Shown here piece by piece: positions 3,175-22,862 of a stretch of 22,862 nt of DNA. The notes below the pieces were generated by a model. It worked only from the letters and a program-made list of their open reading frames with translations, made no database searches and was not told where the DNA came from. Both the position numbers and the translations under genes were made by a program. Within the stretch, counting starts at the first letter, position 1, and every line of letters starts with the position of its first letter. The stretch is taken from positions 1 to 22,862 of the forward strand of contig JBHGNT010000493.1 of assembly GCA_043228905.1 (NCBI GenBank). Direction: 5' to 3'. The stretch is from Azolla caroliniana. Lineage: Eukaryota > Plantae > Polypodiophyta.

Positions 3175-6100
3175 CTGTAATAAACAGATATTATACAATT
3201 TTGATCATAATCTCCTCAGCTAAAATATTATTCTCATGATAGAATACATGAGAAGACAGCAGAATACCCCTCGTTTTTGGGATATTTACCAGAATATCCT
3301 AAGCTTTCAAAACCTACCAGAATTTTCGAAAACATATAATTATTCTGGTAAACATCTGAAACAACTATGGGTATTTTTATACTGGCTAAGTTGTTATTTG
3401 AATTTTCTACCTGGAGAAGATAGCTATGTAGTGAATCCAATGTTTGTGGAAATGTTGTAGCTGATATGTTCTTGACAATAATACCCTAACAAGAAACAAA
3501 CAAGAAACAAAATTTTCTTAATTGAAAGGTAAGCTTTGGGTTTATGTTGTATAAACGGGTGGTTTCACTAGAAATTCTCTCTTAGAAAAGAGGCGCTGAA
3601 ATAATTTGTGCAAGATTGCTTTTGGAGATAAGGATCATACACAATACGTAGAAATTGTAAACACAAGATTGAACTGTATTTATACTGCTGCAGTGTTTAC
3701 GAATAAGACTACAATTAAATCTTAAAGAAAATTTACAAATTTAAAAGGACATGTATGGACGAGATTGTGAGTGAAGAATGGTCTTAAACCCAAATTTAAG
3801 AGTCCAGAGATGCAAAAGAGGGGAAATTTAAGAGTCCAGAAAATGTCATCTATAATGACATATAGGTAATTTCTAACAGAAACTGACCTTTCTTATTTAC
3901 AACTACAATGACATATAGGTAATTCTTATTAGAAGAGGTTTATTCAAGTTTTGTTTCACATAGTTCTGGTTTTATACAGTAACAAGAAACATAGAAAACA
4001 TACAAGTTTTGCATTCAGATCACAAACCTGACCCTTGAAGGAGCATAGGTAGTCCTGAATTGTCATTAGCCTGCTTATAATTGCCTCTTTCTCTGCCTGA
4101 AATATATGAAAAATAGTACAACACTTAGAAACATATCTAGGACATATCCTGTAGAGGTAGAGTTACTGGAACAGTATTCCAAGTCTGAAAAATTCTCAAA
4201 ATAAAATCATTGGTAGAAACCTCCTGCACTTTCTTAAAAACAGTAGAGGATCGTGATGATGTTGAAATTTTAAACAGCTTCAAAAAAATTCATACAAAGG
4301 CTCTTCCTACAATCTCAGTTTGGTGGGAAGAAATTCTGAGTTGGCTATTGCTTTCCGAGCACTATGGGTCATACACATGTCAACGTACCTCGGTCTCTGT
4401 ATGAATTCATTGTTTGAGAAGTTCATGAATGATGTTTGTAGTGGGTAATGTTTGGGGAGAAGGAAGGTTCCCCTGATGTGATCCCACCCTTCAATTGTTT
4501 AGTTTATCATTTGAGAGACGCATACGATATCGAAAGGGTGGCAAGTTCTTGCTGTTGATGCCATTGTCGTTGAACCACGTCACCCTATGAGTGCTAAGAT
4601 CTTTCTACATGTTATGTTGTTGCCATTTACTTCTTTAAGGTGGCATGGTTTAAATCCAGTTGATGAGATTCACAATCTGAAGTAATGCTTCTAACATCAT
4701 TGGGGGTGTTGTCGATTCACCACAAATGATTTCGTGTGGGTTGGTGCTTTACCAAATAACATCCATTTGTGTCATGGTTTAAATCCAGTTGATGAGATTC
4801 ACAATCTGAAGTAATGCTTCTAACATCACTGGGGGTGTTGTCGATTCACCACAAATGATTTCGTGTGGGTTGGTGCTTTACTAATGGATGGACACTCTAT
4901 TTGTGTCTACATGTACATGGAGCGCCCAGAAGCCCACACGGCTGCACCATTCATGAGGGCAAGAGTATAGTATTGAATGATCATACTTTGTGGTAAGGGG
5001 CTCCTGAACTGCGCTTGCTGGTAATTATTGTTCTAGCATGTCCAAAGAGTGAGTCAATCCTTGGCAGCTTGCATCATAGAGAAGTGCCCATTTGTGTGTA
5101 AATGTGACCCCTAGATATACACAGGAACCCACAATTTGCCACCTGATAGGGTAAAAAAAAGTTTGTCAGAAAGCCAATACAAATGTGTAGAAGATTGTGG
5201 CCCAAGTCTTTCCTAGGTTTACGGTGAGCTCTTTTTCATGGCAAACACCATTGAGGGCATTGAGATGTTGTAGATTTCATGATATTTCAGACACAAATTT
5301 ACGTCAATGTAATAAAGAATATGGAAGGATATACCTAATATGTCAATCCCTTCACCACCTCACAAGTGTGACATGGTCCAGTACCTTGTCAATGTAGTCT
5401 GTAGAGGGTGGGCAAGAGTCAGCATCCATGCTTCACACCAATGGTGCTTGTGATTACATTTCATAGCTCCCCTCAACATTCAGTTCATCACCACACTTGA
5501 CCAATTGACTTATGTAACAGGCATAATTGTGTACATGGTTCATATGCTGGGAAGGCCCCTTACATTCCTCTTTATGCCAAAACTTTTGGGGCATATTCTC
5601 AGGATTGTGGTGTATGGACAGAGTATGGTAAGGAAAACTATTGATGGCATAGGTATAGAGTATCGTAGAGAGTTGGGAGGTATTGCCATGAAGGGGTGTA
5701 GTTGGATCCAGATGGAAGAGTCCATGTTGGACAGGGTGACTATGTTTTAGCTAGAGCATGGATAAAGTGGATGATTGTGCATAGGGACGAGGTTGATTTA
5801 TGAGACAGAAGGTGGTTGTGACGGTCTGGTGTTGGCAAGGGTTATGGAAAGTGTAGCTGGCACCAATTGGGCAGGCTGGGATCGTGAAGGTTTTAATGGT
5901 GTGGGTGGCTTCCTATGTCCTAAGGATATAGTCAATTGTGCTCCTGCCACCTTGTGGGAAACATACATGCCACTACAAATTCATTGTGCATCCTATTGCA
6001 GATAACAAGTTGGTGCCAAGACCCTAGCTCCAGTAGATGTTTCCCATATCCTGATTCCTCCAAAGATATTGAACACAAGTCCTCCAAGTCATAAATACCA

Positions 6101-9100
6101 CATTTCTATCTTGGTGTGAAAACATATCCTGTGTTGTCAAGTTCTGAGTCATGTGAGCTCTTACTTGTTCCTGAGTCCTCCAAAGATATTGAACACATCA
6201 TGCTTTGGGTCCTCTAAGTCATAAGTACCACATTTCTATCTTTGAGGAATACTTTACTCTAAATAGGACATTATATGGTGACCAATTTCTTCCTCTCTTA
6301 GTTGCTTGATTGTTTTCATTTACTTACTATGCATAAGTGATCCATTAGAAGGAAGTAACAAAGTAATTCTTTCACTGCTTCAGCCCAACCTTTCTTTAGT
6401 TGAGATTTGATGTTCTCTAGGACGTTCAGTTCAACTTCTCATGATAGGATGGGGAGGTCGGGGGTTTGGGTCAGGGGCAGGGGTCCGGGATCGGGGGTCA
6501 AGTGGGTGGTCATTGAGAGGGAGAGAAGCATGGTTACATGTGCATTAGAGAAAGAAGAAAGAAAGAAAGAAAGATATATTAACGTCTTTTAAGAGGCCAA
6601 AATGGCCTATAAGACCAAATAAGAGATTACATCTTGAGTGTTTTCTCGTCTTTGAGAACAAATCAAAATAAAATAAATATTACACAGTAAATATAAAAGT
6701 AAATAAGATGAAACGAGGGAATCTGGTTTTTGGCACATGTGAGATTCTCAAGTTAGGTATATTGTAGCTTTTGTCTTCGAAAGATCTCTAGCATAAGTCA
6801 ATCCAGAATAGAAATGTCTCCAACGCGAGGGAAGCACCAACGATGGTGGGAGATAATGGTTTTTATCTGTCGATGACAAGGGTGTCAAGGTCGTGGTCCA
6901 TGGGGCCGGGGCCTACGTGCACAGCAAATTGCTATTGCCCCATCAATTGTAACCCCTTTGTTATGTCCTGGTTTGGGCCCCATTTGTGTATCCCGTGATG
7001 GACTTGTATGTAGCATTAGGAGTGATGGGGCTAAAGAAAGTTGGGATTGTTCTTTGTGTATGAGCTCGTGAGGCTATATTCTTCAACAACTTTTCCCGAT
7101 GTCTCTTGAGCTCTAGAAAGAAAAGTCCTAGGCATCGTTGGTCATCATATTCCATTACCTTGCGTAGTGGGCCAAAGCCTTGTTTAAAGAGGCAATGGTA
7201 TCTCCCTCTGATTTCATAAAAGACACGACAATGACAAACATAATGTTCCTTAGATTCCACTCCTTGATGACACAATTGGCAAATTCTCTCTTCTAGATGT
7301 AGTCATGTATATCTGCCTACCTCAATCTATAGCTAATGTGATGAAGTTCGCAGCTGGCCTATCACACTACACAGCGCATAGGATAGATGTATGTCCATAT
7401 AAGGTGGCCTGATAACGAATCCATCCTCCGATGTATGTAAGAAGTGTGTCTTATAGTGGACCATCTTTGTACCAAGTGGTATTTTGGGGCTGATCCATGT
7501 TATCTTGTTTTCCAAGTTAATAATATCAGTTCGAATCACTTTGTTCTTTCCCACTTTGATCATATTTAGATGGGGACAGTCCAAGCTATATTGAAACAGG
7601 GGTAGTGCATTTATACTCATGCCATGTGATTCGAACCATTGTTGCATTTCAGAATACCAACAATGAGTGTCTCCATTTTCAGCCAGCTGTCTTGATGACA
7701 TAAGTGCCAACCTTGGGTACCTTCGTTTAGGGAGCTCCCAAAGACATTGGATAAATGTCACTGATCGGAACAATGCCTCGGTTATTATCGGTGCTGGTCC
7801 CATCTCTGCCCGGATTATATCGTGGGGCACCGATGCTTTGCTCCTTATCATGTGAGCAATCATTGACACTAAAGGTCTCTCTAAATCTTTCCAATGATTT
7901 GCCTTGTTAAGACTCAGTCCCCCTGTTTCTACTCCACAGAGAAGAGTTGGTGTCACAAGTGTATCAAATAACCATAACTTAGTCCATGGCTCTTAGAACT
8001 GCAAATGTGCACATTGTCTCTCGAGAGCACCAAGGGTTGCATATCCACAAGAAAGTCGGGCACAAGCAGCCTCCTGTAAGGAGAACCTAGGTCTTGTAAA
8101 TGTTACTCCTAGGTATGTGTAGGAGCGTGTGTATTCCACCTTTTCCTCTCCCAAGAAGAATTCTGGTTCTGATCTTGTTACCCATGCTTGAGTGGTGTTA
8201 AACACCATCACTTTAGTTTTGTCCATGTTGATTAACAAACCTTTGTCCGCACAAAATAGTTTTAAGGCATTTAGATGTCTTTGTAGTCCCTCCAGAGAGT
8301 CAGAAATCAGCACAATGTCATTAGCATATAGTAATATTTGTATAGCTATACCTGCTAGGCGTGCTCCGGAACCCCCGAATCTCTCTATGTAATGTGATAC
8401 CTCATCTATATAGAGACCAAAGAGAGTGGAGGATAGTGGGCATCCTTGCTTCACTCCAATTGTGCTAGCCACCACCTCTAACAAGCCCTTGGAAGACCGG
8501 ACTTTTCCTAACACGGATTCATAGAGTGCATAGATTCCCCATTACATATGTGTATGAACACCAAGGGCTTCTAGCCGCTGCATAAGCCGAGCACGTGGCA
8601 GTGTCAAAGGGTTTTCGGAAATCCACAAAGCAGCAATAAATCCTCTTATTGTGGGCTCCGCCCTCCTCAATAAGGGCCCGAAGGGTGAATATGTGATCCA
8701 AAGTTGTGAACCCCTTCCAAAAGCTTGCCTGTCCAACTGAACGACAACCATTCTGCTCTGCCCATATACTCAATTCTAAATCTAGAATCGACCCATATAG
8801 TTTAGCCAAGTAATGACCAATCATGATTATCCTATAGTTGCTTGGCATCATTGGGTCTCCACTCTTGAGGATTGGCACGATGGTATGCTGAGTCCACCTA
8901 GTAGGGAAACCTTCACACATGGCTCTATTAAATATGTGTGCTAGCAATGGGAACAAGGTGTCAGGGGCATAGATAAAGTGCTCACCCACCAATCCATCAT
9001 GATCTTGGGCCTTCCCAAATTGTAGTTGATCAATGGTATTTCTTACATTTTCTGGTGTAAAGAAGGTTGATTCATGTGGACGTGAGGCATTCGGGTGGGG

Positions 9101-12100
9101 AAGAGGAGGTTGCCCCGGGATATCATATAGAACCTTTGCATATTCATGCCACACTTGTGGTGAGGTTAATTGTGTGGTGGGTTGCCTCTCATTAAACATT
9201 TTCCATGCTCTTTTACTCTCTTGTCCTAGAAACAAGCTATACAAATGATCTTCAAATTTAGCCAAATGCAATCTCTTCTTCTTCCTTACGAGGCGTTGGA
9301 AGGTTGCTCTCACTTGGTTGTGTGTATAAATGCCCCGTGTCACATCACGCCGCAAGCATCTCCTTGTATCACGACATTCCTCATCATACCAACTATTTTG
9401 TATTACTCTACCAAGTTTGGGGGGATTAGCCGATGTGTGAGGGAAGGCATTTGTGGCTGCTTTATGCAATGATTTGGACAATCCTTGGGTAAGTTCTTCA
9501 AGGGGTGCGAAAGGATCCAAATCTAGCATGCCATTGTATACACTACAACTATACACATCAAATACACATCAATTGTCTCGCGAGTAAATAGATACTTACC
9601 CAGCCCACTCTCCTTAGCATATACATCCTTTGTGCATCCATCCTTTACCTTGAAGCGTAGATATGCCTGATCTGCTGCCAAACCAATAGGTCTACCTGAT
9701 ATTGTGAACATTGTTATTTCAGGTATAAGAGATGGAGATCCCATTAGATAATCGATTGTGCTTGCACCCCCTTTTGGGTTCCAACATGTCAAAGCATCTG
9801 ATCCAGGCCATTGTGACAAGCCATTATATATCACAAATCCATGCTCACCTCCCAAGGCTAGAAAGTGTTTTTCATATTCAGTTATAGCACTCATATCTTG
9901 ATCTTGTCGTTTTAGACCAACCTCTTCTACCATAACTTCTCCATAAACAGCCTCGTTGGTGTTAAACATAGTTGGTTGTTCATTCTTGGTCCGTGCATTA
10001 AAATCTCCTAATAGTATTGTCCCCCATAGTAGCAAATCTTATGATATCATCATATAGTGGTAGATATGCTCATTCACCTAGAGGTGCAAACCTTGAGTAG
10101 GCAAGTGGAAAGTAGCAAATTGCAATATATAACTCCCTAAGATCCCCTCGTTTTATTCGTATCCACATGTAGCATGCATCACATCCTTATGGACAACATG
10201 CACTCTATCATGGAACTCCTTTTTGTATAGCACAGCCACTCCTCCCGAACCTCTAGTGCTTCCTCATGTCCAAGGTTGGGGGCAACATATTGACTCCCAG
10301 CTATATCCTTGTACCTCGGGGAGTTTGCTACCTATGCATTGGTGAGTTTCTATATACATAGCAATATCTGTGTTTTTCAATGTATCTTCAAAATATCCGA
10401 CATCTGTCCGTAGAGAGCCGTTGCAATTCCATATGGTCATGTGTAGGGTCTCATAGGCCATATATCGTCATGTGCTCCTCTTCTCTATAATAATGACCTT
10501 GCCATCTCTATAAACGGCTTATTTTCCTTCCTTTCTTGCATCAAGCACTCGTGGCATGTTTTCTTTGCGGTGTGCCACTTGGGCTAGAGTGAGATCGTCA
10601 TCTAAGTATATTTTTTCACCCTTGAGTACCTTTCTTTTAGAGAGGAAAGCTTTTTTCTTGTCAATGTCCATCAAGCGGATGAGAAGGGCTTTAGCTCTAA
10701 ACTCATCTCTTCCCACCCTCCACACTGAAGCAAATGGAATATCTTATGCTCCAATCTTTGTTTTGAGATTCTTGGCATCTTCTTGTGGACTTCCTTTTTC
10801 AGCCCAACCAACCACTCGTACATTTAACACACGAGCTTTCCTCTTGGCTTCTTCTTCTAATGTAGCATTCATCATTGTTATCCTATCCATGGATGTTCCT
10901 TTTTGCTTTTTCACTACCTCTATCCAAGGAGCTTGCTCTTGCTTTAATTTCGTTTTGGGCGTGCTCAGCTTGAGCTTTGGCATCTTTGCCATGTCTGCCC
11001 ATGTTTGCATTTCCTTAGTGACATTCGCTTTCACTTTAGAGATGCATCTTTCCACTGCTTCTTGTCCTTTTTCGAAATCCACTTTTATAGCTCCTAACTT
11101 AAACCTTACTTGAGGATATTTTATCCTTAAGGCATTGTGCCAGAAATGCAACAGATCATAAAATGCAGGGAAATAAACATTTCAAACAAGACAAGAAAGA
11201 AACCCTACATATGTAGGGTTAACAAAACCAAACGCAGCATGAGACCTTAAAATGCTGAACTTTAAAATGTACAAGAAACCCTAAAAAGCAGTAGGAAAAC
11301 TTAAAATGAAAGACGCGTAAATTGCAGCAACAAATCCTGAAACACATTAAGGAATCCAAAAACGCAATGAGGTATTAACATCTGTTAAGAGGCCGAAAAG
11401 ACCAATAGGAACAAACATGAGATTACATCTTAAAATGTTGTCTCATCTTTAAGAACAAATCAAAATAGACGTAACTAAACATAGTTTACTAAAGAATCTC
11501 GTCATCTAATCACTGCAATTTTGAAGTTAGATTGAGTAAACTTCTGCCTTCGAAGAATCTCAACGATGGACTGCGCAAATATGAACACATCTCCAAAGGG
11601 AGGCACCTTTGGTGCTAGGTGATAATTTATTTGTCAATGATAAGAGTAACACGGCCATGGTCCGGATGGTCGTGGCCTACACGTACAAACATTCTATGAG
11701 TTGATCTATTGTAACCCCATTCACATCCCCTGGTTGAGACCCACTTGTGTACATCAAGAAAGAAAGAAAGAAAGATATATTAACGTCTTTTAAGAGGCCA
11801 AAATGACCTATAAGACCAAACAAAAGATTACATCTTCAGTGTTGCTTCGTCTTTAAGAACAAACCAAAATAAAATAAAGATTACTCCGTAAATATAAAAG
11901 TAAATAAGATAAAAAGAGATGAGGGAATCTGGTTTTTGCAAAGCACATGTGAGATTCTCAAGTTAGATTAATTGTAACTTTTGACTTCGAAAGATCTCTA
12001 GCCTAGGTCGATCCAAAATGGAGAGGTCTCCAGCGCAAGCGAAACACATGCGATGGCAGGAGATAATGGCCTTTATGTGTCAATGACAAGAGTGTTGAGG

Positions 12101-15100
12101 TCATGGTCCATGGGGCCAGGGCCTACATGCACGACAAATTGCTATTGCCCGATTTATTGTAACCCCTTTGTTATATCTTGTTCGGGAGGCCATTTGTGTA
12201 TCTCTTGATTGACTTGTAGCATTAAGAGTGATGGGGCTAAAGAAAGTTGTGATTGTTCTTTGTGGATGTGGTTGTGTGGCTGTATTATTGTCCTTCAACA
12301 ACTTTTCCCTATGTCTCTTGAGTTCTAGCAAGAAAAGTCCTAGGCATCGTTGGTCATCATATTCCATTACCTTGCGTAGTAGGCCAAAGCCTTGTTTAAA
12401 GAGGCAATGGTATCTCCCTTTGATTTCATAATAGACACTACAATGACAAACATATTGTTCTTCAGATTCCACTCCTCAATGACACAATTAGCAAATTCTT
12501 TTTTCTAGAGGTGTTCGTGTATATCTGCCTACCTCAATCTCTAACTAATGTGATGAAGTTCGCAACTACCCTATCACATTATGCAATGCATAGGATAGAT
12601 GTATGTCCAGATAAGGTGGCCAGATAATGAATCCATCGTCCAATGTGTGTAAGAAGTGTCTTGTAGTCGGCCATCTTTGTACGAAGTGATATTTTGGGGC
12701 TGATCCATGTTATCTTGTTTTCCAAGTTAATAATATCAATCGAGATCACTCTATTCTTTTCAATTTTGGTCATATTTAGATGGGGAGAGTCCAAGCTATA
12801 TTGGAACAAGGGTAGTGCATTTATACTCATGCCATGTTACTAGAACCATTGCTGCATTTCAGCATACCAACAATGCATGTCTCCATTTTCAGCCAGTTGT
12901 CTTGATGAAATAAGTGCCAACCTTGGATACCTCCGTTTGGGGAGTTCCCAATGACGTTGGATACATGTCACTGATCGGAACAATGCCTCAGTGATTATAG
13001 GTGCCGCTCCATCTCTACACGGATTATATCATGGGACACCGATGCTTTGCTCCTTATCATGCAAGCAATCATTGACACTAAAGGTCTCTCTAAATCTTTC
13101 CAATGATTTGCCTTGTTAAGACTCAGTCCCTACGTTTCTACTCCATAGAGAAGAGTTGGTGTGACGAGTGTATCAAATAACCACAACTTAGTTCGCGGCT
13201 CTTGGAACGGCAAATGTGCACATTGCCTTTCGAGAGCACCAAGGGTTGCATATCCACGAGAAAGTCAGGCACAACCGACCTCCCGTAAGGAGAACCTCGG
13301 CCCTGTAAATATTACTCCTAGGTATGTGTAGGAGCGTGTGTATTCTACCTTTTCCTCTCCAGAGACGAATTCCGGTTCTGATCTTGTTACCCATGCTTGA
13401 GTGGTGTTAAACACCATCACTTTAGTTTTATCCATGTTGATTGACAAACCTTTGTCCGTACAAAATAGTAATATAGTCCCTCCAGAGAGTCAGAAATCAG
13501 CACAATGTCATCAGCATATAGTAATATTTGTATAGCTATACCTGCTAGGCATGCTGAACCCCCGAATCTCTCTGTGTAATGTGATACCTCACCTATATAG
13601 AGACCAAAGAGAGTGGGGGATAGTGGGCATCCTTGCTTCACTCCAATTGTGCTAGCCACCGCCTCTGACAAACCCTTGGAAAACCACACTTTTCTTGACA
13701 CGGATTCATAGATTCCCCATTGCATATCTGTAGGAACACCAAGGGCTTCTAGCCGCTGCATAAGCCGAGCACGTGGCACATGTGGCACAAAGAGAGATTA
13801 ATGTCTTTTAAAAGAGAACAAAATGCCCAATGAGATCAATATTTGAGTTACATTCACAGAAAATGTTGTTAACAATGTCAGTTTATTGTAGGATAAATAA
13901 AAACTGTCCACCATCTCAGTAATCAAGACTTCTTCCCGAGTTGTATCCTTACATCAACCTACATTAGGAATGACAAAACTTGATTTGCATCTGAAAATGC
14001 TGACCCATCTTGGAGAACAAGCCAAATATATATAAATACATAAGTTAAACTGTCAATAGCTCTCTCTCAAGCATTTTTCTAAGAGTGTATACATTTAGAC
14101 ATTCCATGCTTTTGCAAAACGATTTTGTTCGCCAAGCATACAACAATTGTCAATGTAAGCTTAAATGAACAGAAACAATTGACTTCTAAATTTCTTCCAC
14201 ATGGGCTGGTCTAAGATTGACATATCTCTGAAGAGAGGAAAGTACATTCTTATCAGATGATAATGGCCTCGCATCCATAGGTTCATCCATAAGGAATATT
14301 CTTATGAAGAAATGGAATACTATTACTCTGCCCTTGTTCATGCATGAATGCAAAATCAGTACATATGAGTTTAAGAAATCAGATCGTGCAAGTGATCCAA
14401 GAACATACTAAAGCGATGCAAACTCAGAATGAATACACTTGCAAAAGTTGATAATCATGCTTGCTTATATTATAGAGAAAAAAGTATGTAATTGTTCATA
14501 CCTCCTCTATGAAAGCGCCCTTGTTTGACCTGCATACAACCCACTCTTCCAGTAGTGTCTGGAAAAACAAGAAAATATCAAGCCACGAATATCGAAGGCA
14601 CAATTATGAATATGTGTGATGCAGTACCTTATGATCAAACTCATCCATTTTCAGTACAATCGGGATAATAATGGCTTTAGTGGATGCTTTCTTAGCAGCC
14701 TTTTCAGGTGATTGATCATTAACAGCATTGGTGAAATTTGGCGACTGACCTTTCACTGCATTCACTTTTAGTTGATTCAGAATAATTACTTCCCTTTTGT
14801 GTGTAGCTAAACTATGATAGTTAGCAGAAAATAAGGATTTCCAAAAGCACAATAAATAAAACTGTATAATACCAAATGAAGATGAATTTATAATTGATGC
14901 ATAATGAGGTTCCTGACATGAATCAACTGATGACGCAATGCCCCTGGAACCCCCGACAATTTCGGCCTTAATATTTTCTTCTGAAAATCTTGTGCTTTCA
15001 ATATTGGTGGTAACTTCTGCATTGATATTCTGTCCTTGTTTGGTGCTAGATATCACTTTTTCTGTTTCTCTAGCTGTAGGAATGTCTGCATGGCTTGTCT

Positions 15101-19970: not shown

Positions 19971-20289
19971 AGAAAGAAAGAAAGAAAGATATATTAACGT
20001 CTTTTAAGAGGCCAAAATGGCCTATAAGACCGAATAAGAGATTACATCTTAAATGTTTTCTCGTCTTTGAGAACAAATCAAAATAAAGTAAATATTACAC
20101 AGTAACTATAAAAGTAAATAAGATGAAAAGAAAAGAGACGAGAGAATCTGGTTTTTGGCACATGCGAGATTCTCAAGTTAGGTATATTGTAGCTTTTGTC
20201 TCCGAAATATCTCTATCATAGGTCAATCCAAAATGGAAATGTCTCCGAAGCGAGGGAAGCACCTACAATGGCGGGAGATAATGGCTTTT

Positions 20290-20290
<1 letters not shown>
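19971..20290 (-). mobile_element. Short 5'-truncated LINE copy A (320 bp)
   Basis: (GAAA)n tail then collinear with 6570-6865 of copy 1. Confidence 0.92.
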
Positions 20291-20320
<30 letters not shown>

Positions 20321-20636
20321 AAGAAAGATATATTAACATTTTTTAAGAGGCCAAAATGGCCTTTAAGACCAAACAAGAGATTACATCTCAAGTGTTGTCT
20401 AGGCTTTGAGAACCACAAATCAAAATACAATAAATATTACTCCGTAAATATAAAAGTAAATCAGATAAAAAGAGATGAGGGAAACTGGTTTTTGGCACAT
20501 GTGAGATTCTCAAGTTAGATGTATTGTAACTTTTGTCTTCGAAAGATGTCTAGCATAGGTCAATCCAGAATGGAAAGGTCTCTGACGTGAGGGAAGCACC
20601 TGCGATGGCAGGAGATAATGGCTTTTATCTGTCGAT
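20291..20636 (-). mobile_element. Short 5'-truncated LINE copy B with (GA)13(GAAA)n tail
   Basis: (GA)13 at 20291-20316, GAAA repeats, then collinear with 6570-6874 of copy 1; shares ttactccgtaaa and aaaagagatgaggg with copy 2. Confidence 0.92.
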
Positions 20637-20869: not shown

Positions 20870-21438
20870 TGCAAAGTGACTACATTCACCTCTTCAATTT
20901 CAACATTGCTATCCTTAGGTGGACTCTCTTTCATCTCTTCTTCAGTAGCATTTGTCTTCTTGCCCTTTCCTTTCACTTTCTTCCATTTGTAGCAATCATG
21001 TTTAAGGTGAACCTTCTTGCTACAATGATGGCATTCAATATCTTTACCATGTGATTTACTAGAGCCTTGACGATCAGATTTGCCTCTCTATGTGAAATGC
21101 CCCTATTATGCAAAGCACAAGAGGACTTACAAGATGCATTGTTCTGCCAATTCATCTCTTCGATGTGAAGAGAACTCTCTACATCAACAAACAAGAGCAT
21201 CACATTTAAATTGCTAATGGCAGTTCTAGAGATATCCCAGCTCTTTGGCAAAGTGCAAAGCAAAAATATAGCCTTAAAACTCATCATCAATGACAAATTT
21301 CAAGGGGCACAACAGCTGGCTAATAATAGAATTAAACTCACTCAAGTGAGTTGACATGGGTGGCCCTCTTTCATACGCAAATCCATAAGCTTTTTCAGCT
21401 AATAAACTTTGTTAGTTGCACTCTTCTAGGCATATCGT
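20870..21438 (-). mobile_element. Ty1/copia gag remnant (UBN2-like region plus zinc knuckle), decayed
   Basis: Minus strand KSATNKVY*LKKLMDLRMKEG..STHLSEFNSIISQL, FLLCTLPKSWDISRTAISN..VESSLHIEEMN (ORF 20973-21296), and CHHCSKKVHLKHDC (CX2CX4HX4C) in another frame. Confidence 0.85.
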
Positions 21439-21541
21439 TGTTGGGGTAAAGGCCCTAAATGACCCCCTTATAGTGTGTACATGTGTATAAGCTTGTTTAT
21501 AAAGGCCAGTAGTCACTTATCACTTTTTCATTATTTTTGGG

Positions 21542-22862
21542 CAGATCGTTCTAAATGGTCTTCCTGATTCATATCAAAGTTTTGCTTCTACTCTTCATTT
21601 AATGATGAAAGGTAATCCCAATGCCTTATCATTCAAGGAGTTAGTTTCTGTTTTGTTACAGGAAGATCAATCTAGACAAAACAGGTCTATTACACATGTT
21701 GCAGATCAAGCTTTCCTAGCTAGTCAGAAGGGCAAAGGTAAATGGAACTCTTCTGTTAGCAAGCAAAGTTTTGCTAATACTTCACAAGTGAATGAAAAAA
21801 AACAAGAGCAAAAACAGAAACTATTTTGCAAATACTGTAAAGGAACTTATCAAATTATAAAGAACTGTCCAAAATTGGTTGCAAAAGAGGCAAAGAAAAA
21901 AGAGGCAAGACTGGTTGCTGCAGAAGTGTCTACACCGAAAACGGAATCTGCAAATCTTGTGCAAAATGAAGAATGGGCATTTACTACTATTTGCAGTTTT
22001 GACCCATCTTCACTTGAACAATGTATGCCTACTATAGAATCAGATGTTTGGTACTTCGACAATTGCGCAACCAAACATATTACCTCCCAACGCAATTTCT
22101 TCTCTTCATTGGAGCCTGCCCCTATAGGGAATACTGTCACATGCGCCAACAACTCATCTTATCCAATTATGGGTGTTGGTAAGATCATTTTGACTACTGC
22201 AAATGGCATTTTGTTTGTGCCAGGGATCAAGAAAAATCTGTTGTCAGTTTCAGCATTAGCCAAGATTGGCTTGGTTGTTAAATTTGTTGATGACAGGTGT
22301 ACAATTCATGATCTGTCCAATGGCGATGTTACTATTGCTTCTAGTGTTTTTTGTCGTGGATTGTATATGCTCATAGATTATGAAAGATCGATAAATGATT
22401 CAGCATGTGCAATACAAGATTCTCAAGCTATTTTAGACGCAAAGATGTGGCATGCACGCTTCGGTCATCTGAATTTTGCAAGTTTGCTTTGCCTGCAAAA
22501 ATCTGAAATGGTGTCCTCCTTGCCCAAACTTGAGGCACCTCGGAAGCATGTTTGTGAAGTTTGTATTTTGGGCTAAATTTAGCGTTCATCCTTTCCAAAA
22601 GATGGTTCAGTTAGAGCTACACAAAAATTGCAGATTGCTTATAGTGATGTCTATGGTCCTATGCATGTTTGTGAAGGTTGTATTTTGGGCTAAATGCAAC
22701 ATTCATCCTTTCCAAAAGATGGTTCAGTTAGAGCTACACAGAAATTGCAGATTGCTCATAGTGATGTCTATGGTCCTATGCAGACACAATTCTCTTGGGA
22801 ACTATCTTTACTTTGTGACTTTCATTAATAACTTTTCTAGACATGCATGGGTATATCCATTG
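21542..22862 (+). pseudogene. Copia gag-pol pseudogene (gag C-term, zinc knuckle, protease, start of integrase)
   Basis: QIVLNGLPDSYQSF, CKYCKGTYQIIKNC (His lost), WYFDNCATKH (DSG altered), WHARFGHLN..CEVCILG* with premature TAA at 22574-22576, then LQIAHSDVYGPMQT. Confidence 0.9.
22546..22782. repeat. Tandem duplication, 117 bp x2, inside copia integrase
   Basis: gcatgtttgtgaag...ggtcctat at 22546-22662 and 22663-22779, about 7 mismatches, gca microhomology at the junctions. Confidence 0.95.

What the first reader, a model, noticed from the sequence alone, without database searches (positions are those of the whole stretch)
4300..13860. Head-to-tail array of five LINE units: candidate self-tail-targeting retrotransposon system
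Seen: E0 (4300-6545), copy 1 (6547-11368), F1 (11369-11755), copy 2 (11756-13789) and F2 (13790-13860) are all on the minus strand with essentially no spacer. At each of the four junctions the 5' end of one unit meets the 3' terminus or (GAAA)/(GA) tail of the next; none interrupts another's coding body, as random nesting would. Young copies alternate with diverged ones. Inference: the family primes reverse transcription in pre-existing (TTTC)n/(TC)n tails, so each insertion provides the next landing pad and an old E0-F1-F2 chain was later invaded by copies 1 and 2. Known analogues are Zepp nested arrays, HeT-A/TART arrays and microsatellite-specific non-LTR elements; I do not know of this being described for a land-plant RTEX-like family.
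Basis: partly seen in the sequence, partly recalled or inferred. Interest (0 to 1): 0.85.

Follow-up and report, generated by a model that had tools for sequence, protein, structure and literature searches.

The report
Fern LINE copies stacked head-to-tail
A chain of same-strand copies of an abundant fern LINE retrotransposon, each starting at or near the end of the copy before it, most likely because the family tends to insert into T/C-rich DNA such as its own (CTTT)n tails; this is a new example of a known behaviour, not a new kind of system.

Summary
The array is real. On the minus strand, F2, copy 2, F1, copy 1 and E0 follow one another, and a second pair lies at 19971-20636. Independent contigs from the same organism and from a close relative bridge three junctions.

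- F2 runs to about 14290, not 13860.
- E0 is an old LINE of another family, without a recognisable 3' end.
- The first 170-230 nt of copy 1 match no other copy, so they may be a private 5' UTR or a spacer.
- Divergence is not age: F1 belongs to another abundant subfamily.

The tail-targeting idea is partly supported. I sampled 106 distinct copies from metagenome contigs.
- 6 of 57 have another unit's 3' terminus just upstream on the same strand, against 0.9% at control positions and none on the opposite strand.
- 12 of 57 have a same-strand TC run upstream and none has a GA run.
- About 80% of copies are solitary, so this is a preference, not an obligate target.

Relatives in Ceratopteris, Adiantum and one unidentified ENA contig share the conserved 3' terminus. 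They also stack through (TC)n tails, and full-length copies often start just after a tail.

The clade is unassigned, so "RTEX-like" is untested. Other windows of this genome carry similar, unchecked first-reader notes.

The parts
13790..14290 (-). F2: oldest-looking unit. It is a diverged 3' fragment of about 500 bp with an internal extra stretch of about 135 bp (about 13861-13984) and a short tail (sense CTCTCTTT, 13790-13797). It is the upstream end of the chain.
   Evidence: nhmmer hits 14269-13985 and 13853-13790; alignment A1; 58-63% identity to the other units; only single-copy depth in the read sets.
11756..13789 (-). Copy 2: a unit 5'-truncated inside RT, with a (CTTT)n tail at 11756-11775. 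Its 5' end abuts F2's tail.
   Evidence: 88% identity to 6555-8600; tblastn collinear with copy 1 pieces; C2/F2 junction bridged by a contig of organism B (record 16).
11369..11755 (-). F1: a 387-bp 3' fragment of another subfamily, with terminus GTTAATAC(CTC) and no (CTTT)n tail. Its 5' end abuts copy 2's tail.
   Evidence: 67-69% identity to the other units; F1/C2 junction bridged by contigs of organisms A and B (records 3 and 13).
11140..11368 (-). Presumed 5' UTR of copy 1. It is private to this locus, so it is either a variable 5' UTR or a spacer between F1 and copy 1.
   Evidence: Depth falls from about 1000 to single copy at about 11200. No blastn or tblastx similarity to other near-full-length copies before copy-1 position about 230.
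6547..11139 (-). Copy 1: a degenerate full-length LINE. Parts: ORF1-like 10519-11151; APE endonuclease 9523-10461; RT 7993-9556; C-terminal region 6961-7956; 3' UTR 6575-6960; (CTTT)n tail 6547-6574.
   Evidence: ORFs; Pfam RVT_1 2e-17 and weak Exo_endo_phos; fern homologues at 51-85% identity.
6583..6615 (-). Conserved 3'-terminal two-tier stem-loop: GUCU..GGCCA-UUU-UGGCC..AGAC. It is followed by GTTAATATAT and the tail.
   Evidence: Same fold predicted in most of 15 copies from the window and three other ferns. Inner stem 95% paired with little covariation. z = -2.4 for the last 87 nt. Motif alignment.
4311..6546 (-). E0: an old LINE remnant of a different family, with internal deletions and a 129-bp tandem duplication. 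Its C-rich 5'-proximal stretch (6440-6546 is 67% pyrimidine on the sense strand) abuts copy 1's tail. Both boundaries are uncertain.
   Evidence: tblastn and tblastx collinear hits from 6420 to 4311; no terminus found; composition.
20290..20636 (-). G2: a 3' fragment of about 310 bp with a (CTTT)3(CT)13 tail at 20290-20328.
19971..20289 (-). G1: a 3' fragment of about 300 bp whose 5' end abuts G2's tail. Its own (CTTT)n tail lies at 19971-19989. Its closest relative is copy 1 (93.5%), not G2 (87.9%).

Best explanation
The region is a pile-up of separate insertions of an abundant fern LINE lineage. The elements have an APE endonuclease, an RT, an ORF1, a conserved 3' stem-loop and a (CTTT)n/(CT)n tail.

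Inferred mechanism: target-primed reverse transcription starts most readily where the nicked target strand can pair with the RNA's (CUUU)n tail, or where the endonuclease prefers such sequence. That means DNA which is T/C-rich on the element's sense strand. Every insertion leaves a new (CTTT)n tract, so earlier tails are small but strongly favoured targets, and same-strand trains build up.

Proposed history here: F2 came first. Later units landed in or at the tails upstream of them, and the tail of the last unit ended against the C-rich start of an older, unrelated LINE (E0).

Shown: the anatomy; the assembly across three junctions; the enrichment and strand specificity of stacking and of T/C-rich upstream flanks; and the same habit in related ferns.

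Inferred: the priming or cleavage mechanism, and the order of events.
For: - Anatomy and junctions.
- Junctions bridged by independent contigs of organism A and/or a close relative.
- Local duplication excluded, since neighbours are never closest kin.
- Sample of 106 distinct copies: same-strand terminus within 120 nt upstream in 6/57 against 9/963 controls (p = 8e-5), 0 on the opposite strand. TC run within 60 nt upstream in 12/57 against 6.5% of controls, GA run in 0/57. The last 12 nt are 59-83% pyrimidine, and 'TC' is the last dinucleotide in 13/58.
- Relatives: the Ceratopteris L001 chain (fragment, full-length, fragment, all joined by (TC)n); the Adiantum L002 chain; L003 and L006 5' ends next to a same-strand (CT)n; and L126, where a full-length element starts about 30 nt after another element's (TC)n tail.
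- F2, the upstream-most unit, is the only one without close paralogs, as sequential stacking predicts.
- Copy 1's 5' junction bin has depth 0 and 2.2 in organisms C and D, while F2 and its flank are present there.
- Established background: the 3' microsatellites of RTE-type LINE RNAs are thought to pair with the target or steer the cleavage site (PMC6007223), and LINEs specific for (TC)n and other microsatellites exist (PMC3812793).
Against: - About 80% of sampled copies are solitary, so tails take only about a tenth of insertions.
- Downstream of tails, LINE DNA is as frequent in the opposite orientation (7/94) as in the same orientation (5/94), both above the 1% control. General LINE-in-LINE nesting or regional clustering therefore also occurs, and at least one same-strand case (L055) is a plain nesting.
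- No clear target-site duplications were found, so individual events cannot be delimited.
- F1 has no tail, and the next 170-230 nt cannot be shown to belong to copy 1.
- The metagenome contigs could not be tied to the window's own genome.
- The absence in organisms C and D rests on contig depth only.
Confidence: 0.6

Rival explanations
1. Some or all junctions were made in a single retrotransposition event. The reverse transcriptase reached the end of one LINE RNA, jumped to the 3' end of another LINE RNA of the same or another subfamily, and continued. This gives a head-to-tail chimera.
For: - End-to-end template jumping is a known property of non-LTR RTs (literature titles seen: PMC2104539, PMC8857657).
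- F1 is joined to the start of full-length copy 1 without any (CTTT)n tail.
- Partners often belong to different subfamilies.
- (Near-)full-length elements lie directly after another unit's 3' end in the window, in L001, L002 and L126, and in three metagenome contigs. A jump at the RNA's 5' end would give exactly this.
Against: - Copy 2 and F1 are truncated at internal positions, which would require jumps from broken templates.
- F2 has no close paralogs while its neighbours have thousands, which suggests different ages.
- Copy 1's junction appears absent in organisms C and D although F2 is present there.
- The general pyrimidine bias upstream of solitary copies is not explained by jumping.
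Confidence: 0.2
2. The chain is ordinary clustering. The family is so abundant, and LINE-rich neighbourhoods so permissive, that copies nest into and next to each other. The window is an extreme but chance example.
For: - Summed contig depth reaches about 1e5 at the 3' end, against about 20 for single-copy flanks.
- LINE DNA is enriched next to copies in both orientations.
- Most copies are solitary.
Against: - All seven units in 22.9 kb share one strand.
- Junctions fall exactly at termini or tails and never split another unit's body.
- The upstream-terminus enrichment is strand-specific (6 against 0) and about 12-fold over control.
- The same pattern recurs in other ferns.
Confidence: 0.1
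3. The array arose by unequal crossing-over, by tandem duplication of one unit, or by retrotransposition of one composite read-through transcript.
For: - Tandem Repeats Finder reports 19971-20627 as 1.9 copies of a 337-bp unit.
- In Ceratopteris L001, 264-bp direct repeats that are 97% identical flank a full-length element.
Against: - G1 is closer to copy 1 (93.5%) than to G2 (87.9%), and copy 2 is closest to G2.
- Units differ in truncation point and subfamily.
- The F1/C1 junction is single-copy in four read sets.
Confidence: 0.05

Closest known systems
Microsatellite-specific APE-type LINEs: Kibi (TC)n, Koshi (TTC)n, Waldo (ACAY)n, Mino (AC)n, Dong (TAA)n (listed in PMC3812793)
   Same: - An APE-type LINE whose copies sit in a pyrimidine microsatellite of the same motif as the tail.
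- In Ceratopteris, Adiantum and contig L126, units are flanked by (TC)n on both sides.
   Different: - Those elements are described from fish, insects and a snail, and as sequence-specific.
- In the sample taken here only about 10-20% of copies lie at a tail or TC run.
- The tail in this genome is (CTTT)n.
- The host is a fern.
- Kinship with Kibi was not tested.
RTE-clade LINEs and their SINEs, whose 3' microsatellite correlates with the target or cleavage site (PMC6007223)
   Same: - A stringent-type 3' hairpin followed by a short microsatellite.
- A target bias that matches the tail.
- Extreme 5' truncation.
- Weak or absent target-site duplications.
   Different: - Plant RTEs are reported there with (GTT)n tails and a T-stretch signature.
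- This lineage has an ORF1 and (CTTT)n/(CT)n tails.
- Head-to-tail trains are not described there.
- Clade membership is unassigned.
Zepp arrays (Chlorella) and HeT-A/TART arrays (Drosophila).
   Same: Same-strand chains in which each element follows the tail of the one before.
   Different: Those arrays build or heal chromosome ends and use poly(A)-type tails. This array is interstitial, lies among other repeats, and shows only a partial target preference.
Chimeras made by LINE RT template jumping (PMC2104539)
   Same: Directly fused copies of different RNAs in one orientation. The tail-less F1/copy 1 junction would fit.
   Different: Those chimeras are made in one event and usually involve cellular RNAs. 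Here several units look different in age.

Membership tests
APE-type non-LTR retrotransposon (LINE) | Encodes an AP-endonuclease-like domain and a reverse transcriptase in that order | tested here: met
   RVT_1 at 2e-17 in copy 1. Exo_endo_phos at 2.9e-8 plus RVT_1 at 2.3e-30 in the Ceratopteris relative, which is collinear with copy 1.
APE-type non-LTR retrotransposon (LINE) | Copies share the 3' end and are variably 5'-truncated | tested here: met
   Median unit length is 101 nt in 58 sampled units, and all share the terminus. Summed depth falls from the 3' end towards the 5' end.
Stringent-type LINE (specific 3' RNA recognition) | Conserved 3'-terminal stem-loop next to the tail, kept across diverged families | tested here: inconclusive
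   The motif and fold are conserved across this genome, Ceratopteris and Adiantum. Covariation is no better than in shuffles. No functional test was made.
Microsatellite-specific LINE (Kibi-like) | The great majority of copies are flanked on both sides by the target microsatellite | tested here: not met
   A TC run lies within 60 nt upstream in only 12/57 sampled copies. The feature is met for most evaluable units in the few Ceratopteris, Adiantum and L126 loci, but that sample is too small to count.
Microsatellite-specific LINE (Kibi-like) | Endonuclease cleaves the microsatellite specifically | not testable with these tools
   Needs an in vitro nicking assay.
RTEX / RTE group | RT-domain phylogeny places the element inside the clade | not testable with these tools
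   No reference RT set was at hand. The RT scores about equally against R2 (3e-23) and L1 ORF2p (8.5e-18). The endonuclease has no hit to L1 endonuclease. This argues weakly against L1/Tx1 and says nothing for RTEX.
RTEX / RTE group | Non-poly(A) microsatellite 3' repeat | tested here: met
   (CTTT)n/(CT)n tails. RTE and RTEX families are tabulated with non-A repeats in PMC3472496. The feature is shared with other clades.
Template-jump chimera | The whole chain was inserted in one event, with one pair of target-site duplications and units always present or absent together | tested here: inconclusive
   No target-site duplications were detectable. Read depth hints that copy 1's junction is absent in organisms C and D where F2 is present.
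Local tandem duplication | Adjacent units are each other's closest relatives | tested here: not met
   G1-C1 93.5% against G1-G2 87.9%; C2-G2 88.6% against C2-C1 87.3%.

The most novel reading that the evidence does not exclude
A LINE lineage conserved across leptosporangiate ferns seeds (CT)n/(CTTT)n microsatellites with its tails and then uses them twice. They serve as preferred landing pads. They also supply a pyrimidine-patch-like upstream element that lets the next full-length copy be transcribed. The second use would explain why full-length copies with almost no 5' UTR start right after another unit's tail in L001, L126 and L002, and perhaps copy 1 here. It would be the first microsatellite-seeking, self-propagating LINE system described in land plants.
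Probability: 0.12. Interest if true: 0.7.

Novelty: new member of a known kind. Interest (0 to 1): 0.38.

Why it matters
If the preference holds genome-wide, this lineage both creates and consumes (CTTT)n/(CT)n microsatellites in fern genomes. That would explain LINE trains inside introns and intergenic DNA, and part of the origin of TC microsatellites there. It also gives annotators a rule for splitting such arrays into separate insertions.

The terminus conserved across distant ferns is a ready handle for finding partner SINEs and for testing 3'-end recognition. It does not open a long-standing question. The principle that LINE tails pair with their targets, and the existence of (TC)n-specific LINEs, are already known.

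Tried and rejected
- Pfam on ORF1 and the C-terminal pieces gave nothing usable.
- PDB sequence searches and the ESM Atlas did not place the element in a clade.
- E0's 3' end: no terminus or tail between 3300 and 4473.
- I tested whether the DNA upstream of F2 continues E0, which would mean the chain had inserted inside E0. No similarity was found.
- Target-site duplications: none consistent in 48 sampled units.
- The three similar 5' ends of G1, G2 and F2 are not a hotspot in the sample, so I treat them as coincidence.
- Covariation in the 3' hairpin is not above shuffles.
- Local tandem duplication was rejected.
- A recurrent composite F1-copy 1 element was rejected, because the junction is single-copy.
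- Joints in the read table with sides under 30 nt were not counted as evidence.
- No tRNA-like head was found in the window.
- Literature searches found no description of fern LINE trains. The library is incomplete, so this is not proof of novelty.
Full report
**What is there**

The window is AT-rich plant-like DNA. Its LINE proteins find their best named relatives in the ferns Ceratopteris richardii and Adiantum nelumboides at 51-65% identity, and unnamed ENA fragments at 82-85%.

Self-comparison and a profile of the 3' ends define seven co-oriented units. On the minus (sense) strand, 5' to 3', the main chain is:
- F2, 14290-13790.
- Copy 2, 13789-11756.
- F1, 11755-11369.
- Copy 1, 11368-6547.
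- E0, about 6546-4311.

A second pair, G2 (20636-20290) and G1 (20289-19971), lies 6 kb away.

Copy 1 has an ORF1-like part, an APE endonuclease, an RT and a C-terminal part, all broken by stops and frameshifts. Copy 2 is 88% identical to it and is cut off inside RT.

Each unit ends in a conserved motif, GGTCTTATAGGCCATTTTGGCCTCTTAAAAGACGTTAATATAT, followed by (CTTT)n or (CT)n. The motif folds into a two-tier stem-loop. Covariation in that stem does not rise above shuffles.

**Corrections to the observation**

- F2 is about 500 bp long, not 71 bp.
- E0 belongs to a different, distant LINE family and is heavily deleted. Similarity is traceable only from about 6420 to 4311, and no terminus or tail was found.
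- Copy 1's tail ends against a C-rich stretch (67% pyrimidine on the sense strand). That stretch may be E0's 5' region.
- F1 has no (CTTT)n tail.
- The 170-230 nt between F1's terminus and the first base of copy 1 that resembles any other copy are private to this locus. They may be a variable 5' UTR or a spacer.

**Is the assembly real?**

One contig of a second study of the same organism spans the F1/copy 2 junction with 1 mismatch. Contigs of a close relative (organism B) span the copy 1/F1, F1/copy 2 and copy 2/F2 junctions (records 3, 12, 13, 16).

**How common is the family?**

Summed contig depth reaches about 100,000 at the 3' end, against about 20 for the single-copy flanks. It falls towards the 5' end, as expected for 5'-truncated LINEs.
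- The F1 region also draws depths in the thousands at 88% likeness or more. F1 is therefore a member of another abundant subfamily, not simply an old copy.
- F2 draws only single-copy depth and does look old.
- The bin holding copy 1's 5' end has depth 27.9, 9.2, 0 and 2.2 in organisms A, B, C and D, while F2 and its flank are present in all four. This hints that copy 1 arrived after F2. It rests on contig depth alone.

**Not a local duplication**

Over the shared 300 nt, G1 is closest to copy 1 (93.5%) rather than to its neighbour G2 (87.9%). Copy 2 is closest to G2.

**Test of the tail-targeting idea**

A scan of public metagenome contigs with 25 nt of the terminus returned 118 contigs and 119 units at 106 distinct places. 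The contigs presumably hold host DNA of this or a related fern. None overlaps the window itself.

What the sample looks like:
- Units are mostly tiny, with a median of 101 nt.
- Tails have a median of 19 nt.

Immediately upstream of the 5' ends:
- Another unit's terminus lies on the same strand in 6/57, against 9/963 control segments (Fisher p = 8e-5), and never on the opposite strand.
- A TC run lies within 60 nt in 12/57, against 6.5% of controls. A GA run was seen in 0/57.
- The last 12 nt are 59-83% pyrimidine, and 'TC' is the commonest last dinucleotide (13/58).

So there is a real, strand-specific preference for T/C-rich targets, with tails as its extreme case.

Limits of that preference:
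- About four in five copies are solitary.
- LINE DNA is also enriched next to tails in the opposite orientation (7/94 against 1% in controls), so plain nesting or clustering contributes.
- No consistent target-site duplications were found.

**Relatives**

- Ceratopteris locus L001: a 3' fragment, a full-length element whose ORF1 ATG follows the (TC)n at once, and another fragment, all joined by long (TC)n tracts.
- Adiantum locus L002: a full-length element followed in its tail by a truncated one, and a further unit-tail-element series.
- L003 and L006: 5' ends lie beside a same-strand (CT)n. L004 and L005 show no clear array.
- ENA contig L126: one element's terminus plus (TC)n is followed about 30 nt later by the ORF1 start of a full-length element.

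The habit and the 3' motif are therefore properties of the lineage, not of this locus.

**Mechanism**

The best reading is sequential target-primed reverse transcription. It would be favoured where the nicked strand can pair with the RNA's (CUUU)n tail, or where the endonuclease prefers such sequence. This matches what has been proposed for RTE-type elements (PMC6007223) and resembles the microsatellite-specific LINEs (PMC3812793).

RT template jumping remains a serious rival for tail-less junctions such as F1/copy 1. It would also explain why (near-)full-length elements so often sit right behind another unit's 3' end.

E0 in particular cannot have been a landing pad through its own tail.

**Classification**

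The RT scores about equally against R2 and L1 proteins of known structure. The endonuclease finds no L1 endonuclease. This argues weakly against the L1/Tx1 group and leaves 'RTEX-like' untested. Ceratopteris repeat tables list RTE-X, L1-Tx1 and L2 elements by the thousand (PMC6890710), which does not decide it.

**Verdict**

This is a genuine, well-supported head-to-tail LINE train, produced by a partial target preference that follows a known principle. It is a new member of a known kind, found in ferns, and of moderate interest.

Other windows of this genome carry similar first-reader notes. I did not check them and do not count them as evidence.

Noticed in passing
L001:8188-8449 and L001:13710-13973 (Ceratopteris): Two direct repeats, 97% identical and 264 bp long (3' terminus plus (TC)n tail of one subfamily), flank a full-length element of another subfamily. 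The arrangement looks like a pseudo-LTR. They may be copies of a short non-autonomous partner, or a product of jumping or recombination.
   Followed up: partly
L001:8457, L126:about 4300-4366, L002:19826: Full-length relatives begin directly, or within about 30 nt, after a same-strand (TC)n tract and have almost no 5' UTR. This raises the question of how they are transcribed.
   Followed up: partly
window 4640-4881: A 129-bp tandem duplication (1.9 copies, 98% match) lies inside the old LINE remnant E0.
   Followed up: no
window 20973-22782: Ty1/copia-type remains: a minus-strand ORF with a weak gag-like match (Retrotran_gag_2) at 20973-21296; a plus-strand ORF at 21602-22576 with Pol_BBD and GAG-pre-integrase domains; and a 117-bp tandem duplication at 22546-22782.
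   Followed up: partly
window 11794 (read table 7): 30-40 contigs per run share the last 22 nt and the tail but then switch to a different hairpin arm (GGGCCAATTTTGGC). A second subfamily therefore shares only the extreme terminus.
   Followed up: no
L002:6650-7260 (Adiantum): Inverted GAAACG-rich repeats bracket an AT/CA-microsatellite block inside the presumed 5' UTR of a full-length element. It looks like a small foldback (MITE-like) insertion.
   Followed up: no
L055 (metagenome contig): A 214-nt unit sits inside the RT coding region of another LINE, in the same orientation. It lies right after a CCCTCTC stretch that encodes the conserved PLSP motif, so a T/C-rich coding site served as the target.
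   Followed up: partly
window 7033-7056: An earlier first-reader note reports a PIP-box-like motif near the C-terminus of copy 1's ORF2. I did not examine it.
   Followed up: no
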